Below, in pieces: positions 2,541-62,522 of a DNA stretch of 64,000 nucleotides; positions within the stretch are counted from its first letter, which is position 1; every line of letters begins with the position of its first letter. Both the position numbers and the translations under genes were made by a program. This DNA comes from Rebecca billardiae RCC1528 (Eukaryota; Protista; Haptophyta). The notes below the pieces were generated by a model. It was not told where the DNA came from. It saw nothing but the letters and a program-made list of their open reading frames with translations, and ran no database searches. The stretch is from the NCBI GenBank assembly GCA_965240325.2, contig OZ251235.1:1984001-2048000 (forward strand). The letters run 5' to 3'.

Positions 2541-5237
2541 ATGCAGGCCTCGTACGCGCCGCGCACGTACTGGGTGGACGATCCGATCGACAACTTCCGC
2601 CTGCGCGTCACCCTCTACCAGGACGGCCCCGAGCGCGCCGACGCGGCCAGCCTGCCGACCCAGCCCGAGCGCGCGGACGAGAAGGAGTCGCTGCTCGGCG
2701 GCGTGAGCCGGCGGCGGCGGCGCGCGCGCAAGGGCGACGAGCGCGCGGCGCAGGAGGCGTCATTCGCCTCCCAGGAGCACGCGTCGTACGACTCGCCCGC
2801 CGCCGCCGCGCCCGGCACGCGCGCCAACCCGTACGTGCGCGAATTCGCATGGCAGGAGAAAGTGATTGGCCCGGCCGAGGTGCGCGCGTACCGCGAGCGC
2901 GAGCGGCGCTCGGCGCTCGGGCAGGGGATCGAGGCGCTCGGCACGGGGCTGCGCAGCCTCTTCGCCCAGCCCGCGCCGGACACCAGCTTCCGCGACCGCT
3001 CGTACGCCGAGCAGATCGCTGCGCTCGACGACGAGGCGCAGGCCGCGACCGGACGACCGTTTGCCGGCGAGGTGCTGCACTCGAAGGTGCACGTCGACCG
3101 GTTCGTCGACCGGCGCGAGCTGCGCGCGCGGATGACGACGAGCGAGCTCGAGGAGCCCAGCCCGCTCACCCACGCCGTGCTCTCCGGCCGCGCGCTCGAG
3201 CCGCTGCCGCTCGCGCCCGCGCGGCCGGGCGTGCCTGCGCCCACGCCGCCTCCGTACCAGCTCATGCACATTGTCGCCGATCTGGGCGAGCGCTCGCAGC
3301 CGGCGAGCGCGGCGGCGCGCGCGCGCGCGGGCGAGGACGACGACGACGAGCAGGCGGGGCCCGACCGCACCCTCTTCGTGCTGTGCACGCTGCGCGCGTA
3401 CGCGAACGGCCGGCTCGACATGACGCCCGGATTTTCGAACGAGGGCGTCGAGCTCGAGCCGGACTTGGACGAGTCCGGGGCGCCGCCGCCGCCGGGCGGC
3501 GGCGCGGCGGCGGGGCTGCTCGCGGGCGGCGGCGCGGGCGGCGGCGCGCGGGCGAAGGGGTGGCACCGCCTCACCGCGCGCGACGGCAAGGTCTGGCGCT
3601 TCCGGCTTGACAACTTGGCCGAGCGGCTCGTGAGCGAGACAGAGCGACGCGCGGAGCGCGGCGCGCGCGTGCACGAGCTGATCGCGCGGCAGAACCCGTT
3701 TGGGGGCGGCACGGCGTTCACGCCGCCGCCGCCGAAGGGCGCGGTGGTGCTCAACGTGCTCGGCGAGCTGGTGGGCGCGCACGGCTTCGACGCCGCCTCG
3801 CTCTCCGCGCAGTACTTTGTCCATGTGAACGAGGGCTGGACGGTCTCCGCGTCGTCGTCCGTGCACGGCATGACGCAGGCGTGTCTACCCAAGTGGGTAC
3901 CGGCGGAGCGTGAGTACGAGCACATCGTGCACTTCGGGCTGCCGCTCGAGCTGACGCTGAGCAACCCGAGCTGGGGCGCGCGCGGCGGCGCGGACGACGG
4001 CGCGGGCGCCGGACTCTCCGCCTCGGGCGCGGGCTCCACCGCTGCCGCCACGCTGTTTGTGCAGCTGCTCTCGCGCGACCGCTTCGATCGGCACATGGTC
4101 GAAGGGTACGGGCACGTGGCGATTGCGCCGAGCGCGGGCGCGTGCACGCACCGCGTGCGCACGTGGCGGCCGGCCGCGTCGGCCGCGGCGAGCGTGCGCC
4201 GCTTCTTCGTGCACGAGGTGCGCCCGCGCCGCGCGCGCGCGCCATGGCCGAGCGCCGCGCGCCGCCCCGCGCGCCGCCCCATTCGGGCGCCGCCTGCGGC
4301 CCACCGCCTCGCCGGCCGCCCCGCCCGCGCGCGCCGCCGCCCTCCTGACCACCGCGCCGGCCGGCGCCCGCAGGGAGATGAGATCTCCGACCTGCGGTAC
4401 GTGGGCGTCCCGAGCGGCGTGCCATCGAAGGGCCTCAACAAGTACGGCTTCGCCAGCGAGAAAGCGGGTACGTGCGCGGCGCGCGCGCCCGTGGGCGCAC
4501 CGCCCGCCCCCGGCCGCACGCGCGCGCCCGGTCGTGCGGGGCCCGGAGACTTCCCGGAAACGCCCGGGCGAACGTCGCCGCGAGCGGCCGGGGGCGCGCG
4601 CCGGGCTCGTGCGCTGTGGCATGCGCGCCGACGCGCCGCCGCCGCCACGCCGCCGCGCGCGCGGCGCGCACGCGCGCTCGCAGGCACCGTCGTGATTCGT
4701 CTGAGCTGCATCACGCAGCAGGCGCAGCCCAAGCCGGCGCCGCAGCAGCACTCGGACGAGCGCGGGAGCGCCGGGCACGAGGGCCTGGCGCGCGGCGGCA
4801 CGGCCGCCTCCGCGGGCTCGACGATGAGCAAGGCAGACCGTGTGCGCATGAAGCTCGAGCAGCGAGCAAGGGAGCGGGAGGCTGCGGCCGAGCGCGCTCG
4901 CACCGCCGCCTCCGAGCGGCTCTCAACCACGCGCCCGTCCACCGCCGCCTCCATCGAGGGCGGGGCGTCGCTGCGGCCGCCGTCCGCGCGCTCGGGGCCG
5001 GCCGCTGATCGCAAGGCGAGCGACGAGCTCGAGGCCGAGGAGACGCCATCGCGCGAGCTCTCGGCGCGCGGGCGCCGCGCCAGGGCCGCCCGGCGCGCTT
5101 CCACCGGAGCCGAGGAGGATCGAGACCCCGCCGCGAGCGCAGGCGATGACGTGCGCCCTGCGACCACGCCGGCCACGGGGCTCGGCGCCGCTGCGGCGGA
5201 CGAATCGTCGGAGTCGCCGCTCGTGAAGCTGAGCTGA
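2541..5237 (+). CDS. MKS1: MKS1, B9-domain ciliary transition-zone protein. Inferred introns 4218-4373 and 4468-4683
   Basis: N-terminus TYWVDDPIDNFRLRVTL, motifs FAWQEKV and LCTLRAYANGRLDMTPGFS, B9 domain (GELVGAHGF...HFGLPLELTL...VEGYGH...TWRP), then LNKYGF. The two Arg/Ala-rich inserts are bounded by GT..AG. Confidence 0.88.
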   Translation: MQASYAPRTYWVDDPIDNFRLRVTLYQDGPERADAASLPTQPERADEKESLLGGVSRRRRRARKGDERAAQEASFASQEHASYDSPAAAAPGTRANPYVREFAWQEKVIGPAEVRAYRERERRSALGQGIEALGTGLRSLFAQPAPDTSFRDRSYAEQIAALDDEAQAATGRPFAGEVLHSKVHVDRFVDRRELRARMTTSELEEPSPLTHAVLSGRALEPLPLAPARPGVPAPTPPPYQLMHIVADLGERSQPASAAARARAGEDDDDEQAGPDRTLFVLCTLRAYANGRLDMTPGFSNEGVELEPDLDESGAPPPPGGGAAAGLLAGGGAGGGARAKGWHRLTARDGKVWRFRLDNLAERLVSETERRAERGARVHELIARQNPFGGGTAFTPPPPKGAVVLNVLGELVGAHGFDAASLSAQYFVHVNEGWTVSASSSVHGMTQACLPKWVPAEREYEHIVHFGLPLELTLSNPSWGARGGADDGAGAGLSASGAGSTAAATLFVQLLSRDRFDRHMVEGYGHVAIAPSAGACTHRVRTWRPAASAAASVRRFFVHEVRPRRARAPWPSAARRPARRPIRAPPAAHRLAGRPARARRRPPDHRAGRRPQGDEISDLRYVGVPSGVPSKGLNKYGFASEKAGTCAARAPVGAPPAPGRTRAPGRAGPGDFPETPGRTSPRAAGGARRARALWHARRRAAAATPPRARRARALAGTVVIRLSCITQQAQPKPAPQQHSDERGSAGHEGLARGGTAASAGSTMSKADRVRMKLEQRAREREAAAERARTAASERLSTTRPSTAASIEGGASLRPPSARSGPAADRKASDELEAEETPSRELSARGRRARAARRASTGAEEDRDPAASAGDDVRPATTPATGLGAAAADESSESPLVKLS

Positions 5238-60697: not shown

Positions 60698-61562
60698 CTG
60701 CTTCGCCATCACAGGCTTTGGGCTGCTGGCTGTGAAGGTGGCGTCGTGCCGCGCTTGTGCCTTCGGTCCTCGCGCTCGTGAACGGTGTGCTGCGTCGACG
60801 TGCGTCGTCCTCTCGAAGCGGCCGACTCGCAGCTCGGCAGACACTGCCACTGGCAGCAGCCAGCAGCCTCCGCGCAGCAGCAGCTCGCCAGTCGCCAGCT
60901 TCCCGCGGCGGCTGGGCGTCCGCGCCGCGTGAGCGATGTCACTTGGCGTCGCTCGACGCTCGACCCGACGCCGGGCCCGACGGCGACGGTGCCCGTGCCC
61001 GTGGCCGTGGCCGTGGCCGTGCCGTGGGCGAGTGGCGCTTGAATCGCACCGACGGATCGAATTCATCATCTGTACGGATAAGCAGCACTGATGACGACGA
61101 TAGTAGTCTACTATTCCTGCCTCTTGGATATGAAGTCGACATTTCCATGTCGTGCGCAGCGGCGCCGAAGACTCAGCAGGACTCGTCTCTCTCTGCTGTG
61201 CATCGCGAGTTCAGAATCACTGACGTGAGACCGGCCGCCCGCTGTGCTGGCGCTGGCTGTCTGTGGAGTGTGGAGGACCGGGCAGTCGCCGACCGGTGCC
61301 AGCGCCTGGAAGTCGCGCCGAGCGCGCGACATGGCCACCGCAGACCACGGCGGTGCCGACCGCGGCCGCAGCAGCCCATCGCAAACGCGCGGCCTAGCCT
61401 GCCCTCTCCGCGGACAGCGGCGAGGGCTGGCCCATCGACGCCCGACGCGTCGCCAGACGGGCACGGCAGCACCTTGGGGTGTTCGCTGGTGGAGAGGATG
61501 ACGCTGAATAAATAGGCGCGAGCCAGCCCGGGGACGGCGCAGGGCGGAGCGTGCCGCCCGGC

Positions 61563-62522
61563 TCAGTCGTCCTTGCCGTCCTCGTCCTTGTCGTCCTCCG
61601 CTTCCTCCTCGCCGTCCTCGTCCCCTGCTCCGTCGCCATCGCCGTCGGCCTTAGCGCCGCCCTCGCCCTCGCCCTCGTCGTCGGCTCCCTCCTGCTTGCC
61701 GTCCGCGGCGGCGCCGGGTGCCCCCTCGAAGCCAGGCTTGCCCTTGTTCTGGGGGTTGCGCGGCGACTCGGCCCACTGCGCAGAAAGCAAAGCGGCGGTC
61801 GGGGCAGCGCGCAGCGCGCGTGAGGGGCGTGCGCACGGGCGCACACGGGCTGCTGCGCTCACGAGCTGCCGCGCGCAGCGTTAGCTCGCTCGCAGCGCGC
61901 ACCCGTTCCGCCGCCATCTTGAAAGCATCCCGGTGCCTCAACTCGGGGTGCTCGGCCTTCACCTTCGCCACCTCGTCCTGGAGCGCAGCAGATCATGCGC
62001 GGCGTGGGCACGTGGTGCGATGTGAGCGGCGTGATCGCGGGCGCGCACGGAGCGCGCGTGCGGTGGGGGCGGAGTCCGAGGGGCGTGCGGCGTGGACGCA
62101 CCTTCATGAAGAGGTTGTACGCGCTTGGGCTCCGAGGCGGGCGTGCTGCGCGCAGGCGGCGCAGTGCGTCGTGCAGCGGCGCGCGCGGGTCAGCGAGCCA
62201 TCCAAACTGCGCGCGCGGCGCGGCCGCGCGCGCGCGCGGCGCAGGGCGCACCTGGCTTGTCCTTCTTCTTGCGCCCGCGCTTGGTCGTGACCGGTCCGGG
62301 CGCCTTCGACTGCGGGTACGCCGTCTGCTGGATCTGCACGGCGAACACAGCCTTGCAGTTCCCGCACTGCACCGAAGTGATGCCTTCGGGCAGCTGCACT
62401 TGCAGCTGCGAGCCACAGTTTGGGCAGGTGACCTGGTACCACTGCGGCTGCGGCATGGGCATCGACATCTGCGGCCAGTTTGGCGGGGCGGCGCCAGTCT
62501 GCGCGCCGGCTCCTGGGATCAT
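61563..62522 (-). CDS. YABBY-like transcription factor (C2C2 zinc finger, YABBY/HMG-like domain, acidic tail). Inferred introns 62146-62251, 61978-62101, 61776-61902
   Basis: YQVTCPNCGSQLQVQLPEGITSVQCGNCKAVF, then spliced RPPRSPSAYNLFMK|DEVAKVKAEHPELRHRDAFKMAAER|WAESP. Confidence 0.82.

What the first reader, a model, noticed from the sequence alone, without database searches (positions are those of the whole stretch)
61563..62522. Complete YABBY-architecture gene in an apparently non-green alga
Seen only after splicing four exons: a C2C2 finger (C-x2-C-x16-C-x2-C), a basic linker, then RSPSAYNLFMKDEVAKVKAEHPELRHRDAFKMAAERWAESP, closely matching plant RVPSAYNRFIKEEIQRIKA.NPDISHREAFS.AAKNWAHFP. 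Established: finger+YABBY proteins are leaf and polarity regulators of seed plants, with few reports elsewhere (e.g. Micromonas); YABBY-like HMG boxes alone occur more widely. The introns fall just before the domain, after FMK and immediately before W. From memory, plant YABBY genes have introns at about these places, which needs verifying. Inference: the family may be much older than green plants or was transferred between algal lineages.
Basis: partly seen in the sequence, partly recalled or inferred. Interest (0 to 1): 0.82.

Follow-up and report, generated by a model that had tools for sequence, protein, structure and literature searches.

The report
Haptophyte gene with plant YABBY architecture
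A haptophyte (non-green) alga carries a real four-exon gene for a small DNA-binding protein laid out like the YABBY leaf-polarity regulators of plants, which suggests that this protein design is much older than green plants.

Summary
On the minus strand, 61563-62522, four exons with GT-AG introns encode about 200 residues: a C-x2-C-x16-C-x2-C zinc ribbon, a basic linker, a two-helix HMG-type YABBY domain and an acidic tail. No RNA run was listed for this genome. The splice model is instead confirmed by a relative's transcript (P0002) and by the annotated Diacronema lutheri orthologue, so the host is a Pavlovales-type haptophyte.

On the near-identical orthologue, Pfam YABBY scores 57 bits against 36 for HMG_box. 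The finger is only generically ribbon-like: YABBY_N scores 15-17 bits (cut-off 28.6), and it resembles LSD1-like ribbons at least as well.

The same architecture occurs throughout haptophytes, in a sequence labelled Goniomonas (a cryptist), in many unnamed marine protists, and in green algae whose fingers reach the YABBY_N cut-off. A tree puts plants and green algae on one side of a well-supported branch and haptophytes and the cryptist on the other.

The intron before the conserved W matches exactly in place and phase. The other two lie 1 nt and 2 codons away. Other haptophytes lack these introns.

Verdict: a distant YABBY-family relative, auto-labelled in databases, with no description found in the searched papers. 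Independent domain fusion is not excluded.

The parts
62252..62522 (-). Exon 1 (ATG at 62522; 90 codons plus 1 nt). It holds the N-terminal leader, the zinc ribbon and the basic linker.
   Evidence: sequence; 81% identical to the transcript protein P0002; 80% identical to D. lutheri P0068. The start matches the orthologues' starts.
62328..62444 (-). C4 zinc ribbon, residues 27-65, with C33/C36/C53/C56 (C-x2-C-x16-C-x2-C).
   Evidence: Zn_ribbon_4 26.8 bits, YABBY_N 16.6, zf-LSD1 14.6, all below their cut-offs; nearly invariant across haptophytes; four strands at pLDDT above 90 in the model of P0002.
62253..62282 (-). Basic linker KRGRKKKDKP. Probably a nuclear localisation signal or a DNA-contacting arm (inferred).
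   Evidence: Sequence. A basic run at this place is kept in all 17 aligned relatives.
62146..62251 (-). Intron 1, 106 nt, phase 1, six residues upstream of SAYN.
   Evidence: The paralogue L001 has the same place and phase. The plant intron has the same phase but lies 2 codons further upstream.
62102..62145 (-). Exon 2, 44 nt: (A)RPPRSPSAYNLFMK, the start of the YABBY domain.
   Evidence: YABBY model positions 23-33; tblastn with P0002.
61978..62101 (-). Intron 2, 124 nt, phase 0, directly after the K of FMK.
   Evidence: The plant intron lies 1 nt earlier, at phase 2 inside the K codon, in 109 of 109 loci.
61903..61977 (-). Exon 3, 75 nt, 25 codons: DEVAKVKAEHPELRHRDAFKMAAER. It covers the end of helix 1, the loop and helix 2.
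   Evidence: YABBY is the only Pfam hit (24.3 bits, positions 34-56). The corresponding plant exon also holds 25 whole codons.
61776..61902 (-). Intron 3, 127 nt, phase 0, immediately before the conserved W codon.
   Evidence: The plant loci show the same position and phase (AAKN|GT...AG|TGG). So do the paralogue L001 and D. lutheri.
61563..61775 (-). Exon 4. WAESPRNPQN ends the domain (61746-61775). A Gly/Asp/Glu-rich acidic tail follows, with stop TGA at 61563-61565.
   Evidence: The motif W..SP.NP[QK]N is conserved in the family. The tail is disordered in the model.

Best explanation
This is a real nuclear gene of a Pavlovales-type haptophyte. It encodes a small DNA-binding protein of about 200 residues that is a distant homologue of plant YABBY proteins.

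Shown: a four-exon structure; an N-terminal C4 zinc ribbon; a basic linker; a domain that best matches the YABBY C-terminal model and folds as two helices (helices I and II of an HMG box, with no helix III); and an acidic disordered tail.

Inferred mechanism, from plant YABBY and HMG-box proteins. The two-helix domain and the basic arm bind DNA. The zinc ribbon mediates self-association or partner binding. The basic run brings the protein into the nucleus. The acidic tail tempers DNA binding, as it does in HMGB proteins.

Inferred history. The gene belongs to an old finger-plus-YABBY family shared by Haptista, Cryptista and the green lineage. The haptophyte/cryptist branch (finger x16, short linker) and the green/plant branch (finger x20, long linker) are deep sister groups, not the product of a recent transfer.
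For: Gene model.

Domain: YABBY scores 57.1 bits against HMG_box 36.2 on P0002, and 35 of 44 family members hit YABBY.

Fold: four strands plus two helices at pLDDT above 90, with no third helix. PDB matches are only to helices I-II of HMG boxes.

Comparison with a plant YABBY: BLASTP aligns finger and box in one colinear hit (E 4e-18) and hhalign gives 98.6%. The finger alone scores 23-26 bits. With the cysteines held fixed, 0 and 1 of 1000 shuffles reach the real score.

Bridge through green algae: green-algal proteins with the same order of parts score YABBY_N 28.4-30.4 bits and YABBY 30-65 bits. Finger-to-finger hhalign gives 94.3% for haptophyte against green and 96.8% for green against plant.

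Distribution: Diacronema, Emiliania, Phaeocystis, Coccolithus, Goniomonas, Bryopsis and many marine contigs.

Tree: the branch separating plants plus green algae from haptophytes plus the cryptist has support 98/97.

Introns: the W intron is identical in place and phase in 109 plant loci and here. Under a uniform null the observed pattern has P about 5e-4.

Leads only: the language-model and fold searches rank plant YABBY clusters next after the haptophyte cluster.
Against: The finger fails the YABBY_N cut-off. It is at least as similar to LSD1-like ribbons elsewhere in this genome (33 bits; hhalign 96.9%).

The YABBY C-terminal model also scores 42-63 bits on finger-less small proteins of a fungus and of unnamed organisms. 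So the box alone does not define the plant family, and the finger could have been joined to it more than once.

The W intron is also in the finger-less paralogue. It therefore speaks for the box, not for the fusion.

The three introns are missing in Emiliania. Other prymnesiophytes have an intron four codons away. Bryopsis has none in the box.

Only two plant cDNA sequences and one named green alga were available for the tree. Most protist rows are unnamed. The Goniomonas label rests on one transcriptome.

No RNA data exist for this strain, and no binding was tested.
Confidence: 0.6

Rival explanations
1. Convergent architecture. A common LSD1-like zinc ribbon was fused independently, in a haptophyte/cryptist ancestor, to the widespread two-helix YABBY-like HMG box. 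Only the box would then be homologous to plant YABBY, and the resemblance of the whole layout would be coincidence.
For: The finger HMM scores an unrelated tandem-ribbon protein of the same genome at 33 bits, and hhalign to it is 96.9%, higher than to green or plant YABBY fingers. Finger spacing differs (x16 against x20). The box occurs alone or with another N-terminal domain. The shared W intron belongs to the box, because the finger-less paralogue has it too. The plant finger intron is absent here.
Against: The order of parts is the same, with the finger N-terminal in every lineage. The alignment to a plant YABBY is colinear. Green-algal intermediates link the fingers. In the tree of finger-plus-box proteins, three of the four groups each form one side of a branch, the green group is unresolved, and the branching of the named groups is taxonomically plausible.
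Confidence: 0.25
2. Transfer. The gene, with its introns, came into haptophytes from a green or streptophyte-like alga by endosymbiotic or horizontal transfer.
For: One intron position is identical with land plants and two are close. A green signal in the nuclear genomes of algae with red-derived plastids has been discussed in the literature (own knowledge; the claim is contested).
Against: Haptophyte sequences are not nested in the green/plant clade; a branch with 98/97 support separates them. The family is in both haptophyte classes and in a plastid-lacking cryptist. The green algae sampled lack the box introns.
Confidence: 0.08
3. Protease-less GCNA. The protein is a shortened member of the GCNA/ACRC family (disordered region, SprT protease, zinc finger, HMG box), as Carmell et al. 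2016 proposed for plant YABBY.
For: PMC5098910 lists the same finger, disordered region and two-helix HMG combination, and reports a GCNA protein in Emiliania.
Against: This genome has its own canonical GCNA (L004: SprT 45 bits, Zn_ribbon_SprT, HMG_box only 13 bits, no YABBY hit). hhalign of the finger against the GCNA finger gives 4.4%. The order of parts also differs: the tail here is C-terminal and acidic.
Confidence: 0.04
4. A rival about function, compatible with any of the histories above. It is not a sequence-specific regulator but an HMGB-like architectural chromatin protein.
For: It has a basic arm, an HMG-type helix pair and a long acidic tail, as in HMGB1. The nearest solved structures are HMGB1, Nhp6A and Abf2. 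It is one of only two YABBY-box genes found in this genome, and the finger is highly conserved.
Against: Helix III of the HMG box is absent. The YABBY model wins by 21 bits. Plant proteins with this domain act as transcription factors (PMC8074164).
Confidence: 0.3

Closest known systems
Plant YABBY transcription factors (FIL/YAB1, YAB2, CRC, INO; Pfam YABBY_N PF24868 plus YABBY PF04690)
   Same: The order of parts is the same: N-terminal C2C2 ribbon, linker, two-helix HMG-like YABBY domain. The box motifs are shared (PSAYN.F.K.E, H[RK][ED]AF, AA..W). There is a phase-0 intron directly before the W codon, a 25-codon exon before it, and an intron at the end of F[IM]K (1 nt off). The alignment is colinear with E 4e-18.
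   Different: Finger spacing is x16, not x20, and the finger fails the YABBY_N cut-off. There is no intron in the finger. The linker is about 25 residues, not 50-100. The tail is acidic and the plant HFGL motif is absent. The host is a unicellular haptophyte with no leaves or polarity to specify.
Green-algal YABBY-like proteins (Bryopsis sp. GMH40088.1; unnamed compact marine picoeukaryote contigs, probably Mamiellophyceae, cf. the Micromonas report of Worden et al. 2009)
   Same: Finger plus YABBY box. Finger-to-finger hhalign gives 94.3%. The box scores about 66 bits against the haptophyte profile.
   Different: The green forms have x20-22 fingers that reach the YABBY_N cut-off, linkers of about 150-190 residues and lengths of roughly 350-490 aa. 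They group with land plants across a 98/97 branch. Bryopsis shares the plant finger intron; the haptophyte gene does not.
Finger-less YABBY-like small HMG proteins (for example Spiromyces aspiralis EV182_003651, P0136) and the Cys-less paralogue in this genome (L001)
   Same: The same box with the W..SP.NP[KQ]N ending. The YABBY model scores 42-63 bits. The paralogue shares introns 1 and 3.
   Different: They have no zinc ribbon. The paralogue has a cysteine-free strand-rich N-terminal domain, and the fungal protein is only 84 residues long.
LSD1-type zinc-finger proteins (C2C2-LSD; Pfam zf-LSD1 PF06943)
   Same: The ribbon pattern C..C...L.V.P.G...V.C..C. JGI names relatives of this protein 'LSD1 subclass zinc finger protein'. 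hhalign to LSD1-like ribbons of this genome gives 96.9%.
   Different: zf-LSD1 scores 14.6 bits against a cut-off of 20.2. LSD proteins carry several fingers and no HMG-type box.
GCNA/ACRC family (Carmell et al. 2016, PMC5098910)
   Same: A zinc finger, a disordered region and a two-helix HMG box in one protein.
   Different: There is no SprT protease. The finger is unrelated by hhalign (4.4%). This genome has a separate canonical GCNA.

Membership tests
Plant-type YABBY family | C-terminal YABBY domain (Pfam PF04690) above the gathering score and better than generic HMG models | tested here: met
   P0002, whose matched stretch differs from the window by one K/R, scores YABBY 57.1 bits (cut-off 28.6) against HMG_box 36.2 and HMG_box_2 32.5. 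The window exons scanned apart give 15.0 and 24.3 bits on adjoining model positions 23-33 and 34-56. The joined window protein was not scanned.
Plant-type YABBY family | N-terminal zinc finger matching Pfam YABBY_N (PF24868) above its gathering score | tested here: not met
   16.6 bits on window exon 1 and 11-16 bits on relatives, against a cut-off of 28.6. Only 1 of 44 family members has E at or below 0.01.
Plant-type YABBY family | Finger homologous to the plant YABBY finger by more sensitive comparison | tested here: inconclusive
   hhalign gives 31.6% to two plant fingers, 94.3% to green-algal YABBY fingers and 96.9% to LSD1-like ribbons. In the Cys-fixed shuffle test, 0 and 1 of 1000 shuffles reach the real score.
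Plant-type YABBY family | Finger spacing C-x2-C-x20-C-x2-C | tested here: not met
   The window has C-x2-C-x16-C-x2-C. The plant cDNAs L052 and L037 have x20.
Plant-type YABBY family | Order of parts: finger, then linker, then YABBY domain, alignable colinearly | tested here: met
   One BLASTP alignment covers both parts (64.7 bits, E 4e-18). hhalign gives 98.6% over 107 columns.
Plant-type YABBY family | Two-helix HMG-like fold without helix III | tested here: met
   In the AlphaFold2 model of P0002, helices 98-113 and 119-132 have pLDDT about 96 and nothing ordered follows them.
Plant-type YABBY family | Conserved intron positions (one in the finger, one just before the box, one in the K codon of FIK, one before W) | tested here: inconclusive
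   The intron before W matches in place and phase. The FIK/FMK intron is 1 nt off with another phase. The intron before the box has the same phase but lies 2 codons off. The finger intron is absent. These introns are not shared by Emiliania, other prymnesiophytes or Bryopsis.
Plant-type YABBY family | Acts as a DNA-binding transcription factor | not testable with these tools
   There is no binding or expression data for this organism; no RNA run was listed.
Canonical HMG-box proteins (PF00505) | Complete three-helix L-shaped box | tested here: not met
   HMG_box matches only model positions 1-44 of 69. The model has no third helix. PDB hits cover helices I-II only.
GCNA/ACRC | SprT-like metalloprotease domain upstream of the finger and HMG box | tested here: not met
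   No SprT hit in any exon. The genome's only SprT locus is elsewhere (C33, L004). hhalign of finger against finger gives 4.4%.
LSD1-type zinc-finger proteins | zf-LSD1 (PF06943) above its gathering score, usually in several copies | tested here: not met
   A single finger scores 14.6 bits against a cut-off of 20.2.

The most novel reading that the evidence does not exclude
The finger-plus-YABBY gene, with at least the intron before the conserved W, already existed in a common ancestor of the green lineage, cryptists and haptophytes. Plant YABBY polarity regulators would then descend from a regulator of unicellular eukaryotes. Pavlovales would keep the most plant-like gene structure known outside land plants. 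Haptophytes would offer a single-copy, unicellular system in which to find the ancestral function.
Probability: 0.4. Interest if true: 0.75.

Novelty: new variant of a known kind. Interest (0 to 1): 0.6.

Why it matters
YABBY genes are textbook 'plant-specific' regulators of leaf and carpel polarity. Their origin is an acknowledged open question. The reviews read here trace them only to land plants plus a precursor in Micromonas (PMC8074164). One paper derives them from GCNA (PMC5098910), and another predicts them patchily in red algae (PMC12567131).

The only haptophyte transcription-factor survey in the library lists no YABBY family. It does list one 'C2C2-LSD' gene in Pavlova sp. and one in Tisochrysis lutea, which may be this gene (PMC4827209; that link is my inference).

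A conserved finger-plus-YABBY gene in haptophytes and a cryptist would move the origin of the architecture well before green plants. It shares an exact intron with land plants and sits on the far side of a well-supported branch from the green clade. It would also give an experimentally simple system, one finger-bearing copy per genome in a unicell, in which to ask what the ancestral protein did.

Tried and rejected
1. RNA evidence for this strain. The look-up of sequencing runs listed no run. Expression rests on relatives' transcripts only.

2. Fetching plant YABBY proteins by protein search. The word search with the haptophyte profile and with the most plant-like green-algal box returned no plant protein. 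The best 150 rows of the big profile search showed none either. Plant sequences were obtained instead with a degenerate DNA pattern for PSAYNRFIK in metagenome contigs, which gave 109 genomic plant loci and three cDNA-like contigs.

3. Naming the unnamed relatives. Three cluster look-ups and contig look-ups named only Goniomonas avonlea and Bryopsis sp. The compact contigs of about 60% GC with intronless genes are only inferred to be Mamiellophyceae. The NCBI records MDSX01 and MDSY01 could not be named.

4. Solved structures. No YABBY structure is in the PDB copy, only HMG boxes.

5. Fold search in the Atlas. The TM-score is about 0.3, too low to count. Only the ranking is suggestive.

6. W intron in a fungal finger-less relative. 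The Spiromyces gene is intronless, so it is uninformative.

7. GCNA origin. Rejected for this gene.

8. Green host. Rejected.

9. Haptophyte TF survey supplements. They hold no YABBY or HMG entry.

11. The joined four-exon protein of the window was never built or sent to a tool. The orthologue P0002 served as a stand-in.

Full report
**The sequence**

The gene lies on the minus strand. From ATG at 62522, an open frame runs to a GT donor at 62251. It encodes a short leader, a zinc ribbon with cysteines at residues 33, 36, 53 and 56 (C-x2-C-x16-C-x2-C), and the basic run KRGRKKKDKP.

Three further exons follow, bounded by GTGCG donors and CAG acceptors:
- 62145-62102
- 61977-61903
- 61775-61563

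They continue the frame through (A)RPPRSPSAYNLFMK, DEVAKVKAEHPELRHRDAFKMAAER and WAESPRNPQN, and then an acidic Gly/Asp/Glu tail. The protein is about 200 residues.

**Is the gene real?**

No RNA run of this genome was listed, so I used relatives. A word search with exon 1, given by reference, found 27 proteins.
- P0002 comes from an MMETSP transcript and is 81% identical in exon 1. It reads straight through all three proposed junctions.
- The annotated Diacronema lutheri protein KFE25_001852 (P0068) does the same. It is 80% identical in exon 1, and it is also carried whole, without introns, on a short JGI contig (L007, cDNA-like).
- The D. lutheri genomic locus has introns at the same three places.
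- Between the two genomes the conserved coding stretches are 79-85% identical, the acidic tail of exon 4 58%, and the introns 47-61%.

The model is therefore well supported, although expression in this very strain is not shown. The host is a Pavlovales-type haptophyte, not a green alga. This rests, and earlier notes on this genome also call it haptophyte-like.

**What are the domains?**

Scanned exon by exon:
- Exon 3 hits only Pfam YABBY (24.3 bits, model positions 34-56).
- Exon 2 hits YABBY positions 23-33.
- Exon 1 hits a crowd of zinc ribbons, all below their cut-offs: Zn_ribbon_4 26.8 bits, YABBY_N 16.6, zf-LSD1 14.6.

On P0002, whose matched stretch differs from the window by one K/R, the scores are YABBY 57.1 bits (cut-off 28.6), HMG_box 36.2 and HMG_box_2 32.5. 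The box is therefore YABBY-type, not a generic HMG box.

An AlphaFold2 model of P0002 gives a four-stranded ribbon and two helices at pLDDT above 90. There is no third helix, and the linker and tail are disordered. The PDB copy holds no YABBY structure; the nearest solved chains are HMG boxes aligned over helices I-II only.

**How wide is the family?**

The profile search of 1.84 billion representatives gave 1923 hits at E up to 0.001. These include:
- The haptophyte family. Named members (from the word search) come from Emiliania, Phaeocystis, Coccolithus and Diacronema.
- Dozens of proteins below 50% identity that keep finger, linker and box in one colinear match.

One of these clusters carries a Goniomonas avonlea label, a plastid-lacking cryptist.

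A second group has long linkers and x20-22 fingers. It includes Bryopsis sp. (a green alga) and proteins from compact intronless marine contigs of about 60% GC. In this group YABBY_N scores 28.4, 28.5 and 30.4 bits in three of the four proteins scanned and 16.9 in Bryopsis, and YABBY reaches 30-65 bits.

The box also occurs without a finger:
- in small proteins of the fungus Spiromyces and of unnamed organisms, where YABBY scores 42-63 bits;
- in this genome's own paralogue on contig 1, which has a cysteine-free N-terminal domain.

The box alone does not define the plant family.

**Comparison with real plant genes**

Protein searches did not return plant YABBYs. I therefore scanned metagenome contigs with a degenerate pattern for PSAYNRFIK. 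This gave 109 genomic plant YABBY loci and cDNA-like contigs of a YAB2-like dicot (L052) and a monocot (L037).

Results against the plant sequences:
- P0002 against the dicot protein gives one colinear BLASTP alignment from the first cysteine to the W..P motif (64.7 bits, E 4e-18).
- The haptophyte profile gives hhalign 98.6% over 107 columns.
- The finger alone gives 23-26 bits.
- The finger beats 999-1000 of 1000 shuffles that keep the cysteines fixed.

Finger-only hhalign comparisons temper this:

| Haptophyte finger against | hhalign probability |
|---|---|
| two plant fingers | 31.6% |
| green-algal fingers | 94.3% |
| tandem LSD1-like ribbons in an unrelated large protein of this genome | 96.9% |
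| this genome's GCNA finger | 4.4% |

Green-algal fingers against plant fingers give 96.8%. So the finger belongs to the LSD1/YABBY-like ribbon class and is linked to plant fingers through green-algal intermediates. Sequence alone cannot show that it is the YABBY finger.

**Introns**

In all 109 plant loci:
- the mini-exon (P)PEKRQRVPSAYNRFI(K) starts with a phase-1 intron;
- it ends with a phase-2 intron inside the K codon (AA|GTRAGT);
- the next exon holds 25 whole codons;
- it ends with a phase-0 intron directly before TGG (W).

A phase-0 intron also splits the finger five residues after the second cysteine.

The window gene compares as follows:

| Window intron | Plant counterpart |
|---|---|
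| Phase 1, before the box | Same phase, 2 codons nearer the box than in plants |
| Phase 0, directly after the K of FMK | 1 nt later, different phase |
| Phase 0, directly before W, after a 25-codon exon | Identical place and phase |
| None in the finger | Plant finger intron absent here |

If three introns fall at random in the alignable 279 nt, the chance of at least one exact match is 0.04. The chance of the whole pattern is about 5e-4. Real intron gain is not uniform, so these figures flatter the case.

Evidence against deep conservation:
- Emiliania has no intron from finger to box.
- Several prymnesiophyte proteins read through an intron four codons upstream, after AFKM.
- Bryopsis has none in the box, although it shares the plant finger intron.
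- The finger-less paralogue shares introns 1 and 3. The W intron is therefore a property of the box, not of the fusion.

**Tree**

I built a tree of 39 finger-plus-box proteins over 177 columns.
- A branch with 98/97 support separates {two plants, Bryopsis, the compact-genome green-type proteins and two unnamed rows} from {Pavlovales, prymnesiophytes, the Goniomonas-type and 20 unnamed protist rows}.
- Plants group with the green-type proteins (96/92).
- Pavlovales (99/100) and prymnesiophytes (98/96) are each well supported.
- Haptophytes as a whole are not resolved (44/71).

Haptophyte genes are not nested among green ones. This argues against a recent green-to-haptophyte transfer and fits an old split. 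The tree is unrooted, the alignable part is short, and most rows are unnamed.

**The GCNA idea**

Carmell et al. proposed that YABBY is a protease-less GCNA. This genome has a canonical GCNA with a SprT domain, a SprT-type ribbon and a weak HMG box. Neither its finger nor its box resembles the gene studied here.

**Literature and databases**
- In the searched library, two papers hold both 'YABBY' and 'haptophyte'. Their passages were not read. The only paper holding 'YABBY' and 'Emiliania' is the GCNA paper.
- Reviews trace YABBY to land plants plus Micromonas.
- A 2025 paper predicts YABBYs in some red algae.
- The haptophyte TF survey lists no YABBY family. It does list one 'C2C2-LSD' gene in Pavlova sp. 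and one in T. lutea. JGI names relatives 'LSD1 subclass zinc finger protein', so that entry may be this gene; this link is my inference.
- UniProt auto-labels the Emiliania orthologue 'YABBY protein C-term...' and others 'HMG box domain-containing protein'.

The family is thus present in databases, but I found no description of it in the papers searched.

**Mechanism (inferred)**

By analogy with plant YABBY and HMG-box proteins:
- The helix pair and the basic arm bind DNA.
- The ribbon mediates self-association or partner contacts.
- The basic run is a nuclear signal.
- The acidic tail moderates binding, as in HMGB1.

Whether the protein reads a motif or merely shapes chromatin is open.

**Limits**
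- The plant side rests on two cDNA-like contigs and on genomic exons from host DNA in plant-associated metagenomes.
- The Goniomonas label rests on one transcriptome.
- The Mamiellophyceae identity of the compact green-type contigs is inferred.

Noticed in passing
L001 1075-1890 (G000:C1, about 3113636-3114451, + strand): A paralogue of the gene. It has a cysteine-free, strand-rich N-terminal domain (pattern like V.VP....G..M.V.TP.G....V.VP....P...FQI.VP), a basic linker and a YABBY box (45.9 bits). It shares introns 1 and 3 of the window gene but lacks intron 2. The same Cys-less architecture occurs in unnamed proteins P0230 and P0254. It may be a zinc ribbon that lost its cysteines.
   Followed up: partly
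L004 15-2163 (G000:C33, about 682465-684613, + strand): A canonical GCNA/ACRC-type gene. It has a long Ser/Asp-rich disordered N-terminus, a SprT-like HEMCH protease, a SprT-type zinc ribbon and a weak two-helix HMG box.
   Followed up: partly
L134 1447-1770 (G000:C11, about 2444446-2444769, + strand): Two tandem LSD1-like zinc ribbons (C-x2-C-x14/15-C-x2-C) inside an open frame of about 1600 residues. They score 33 bits with the haptophyte YABBY-finger profile, higher than real plant YABBY fingers do.
   Followed up: partly
L002 1156-1944 (G000:C10, about 951809-952597, + strand): A protein with three generic HMG boxes in a row. It hits the YABBY model only weakly (25 bits) and is not part of the family.
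   Followed up: no
Database proteins P0015, P0045, P0006, P0009, P0026: Gene calls on prymnesiophyte metagenome contigs read through a short in-frame intron after AFKM. The stored proteins therefore carry intron-encoded inserts or false C-termini.
   Followed up: partly
L073 (contig Ga0209653_1000017, 139 kb), match at 4538-4564: A non-plant hit of the PSAYNRFIK-type pattern. It is a Lys/Asn-rich HMG-like box (PTAYNRFIK...AAEIW) on a long AT-rich contig, and its origin is unknown.
   Followed up: no
window 61000-61030: A (GCCGTG)n microsatellite just downstream of the gene. On the minus strand it reads as a His-Gly repeat in a spurious long ORF.
   Followed up: no
L009 1001-2930 (Bryopsis sp.): The Bryopsis YABBY-like gene has a phase-0 intron five residues after the second finger cysteine. 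This is the same place and phase as the finger intron of land-plant YABBY genes.
   Followed up: partly
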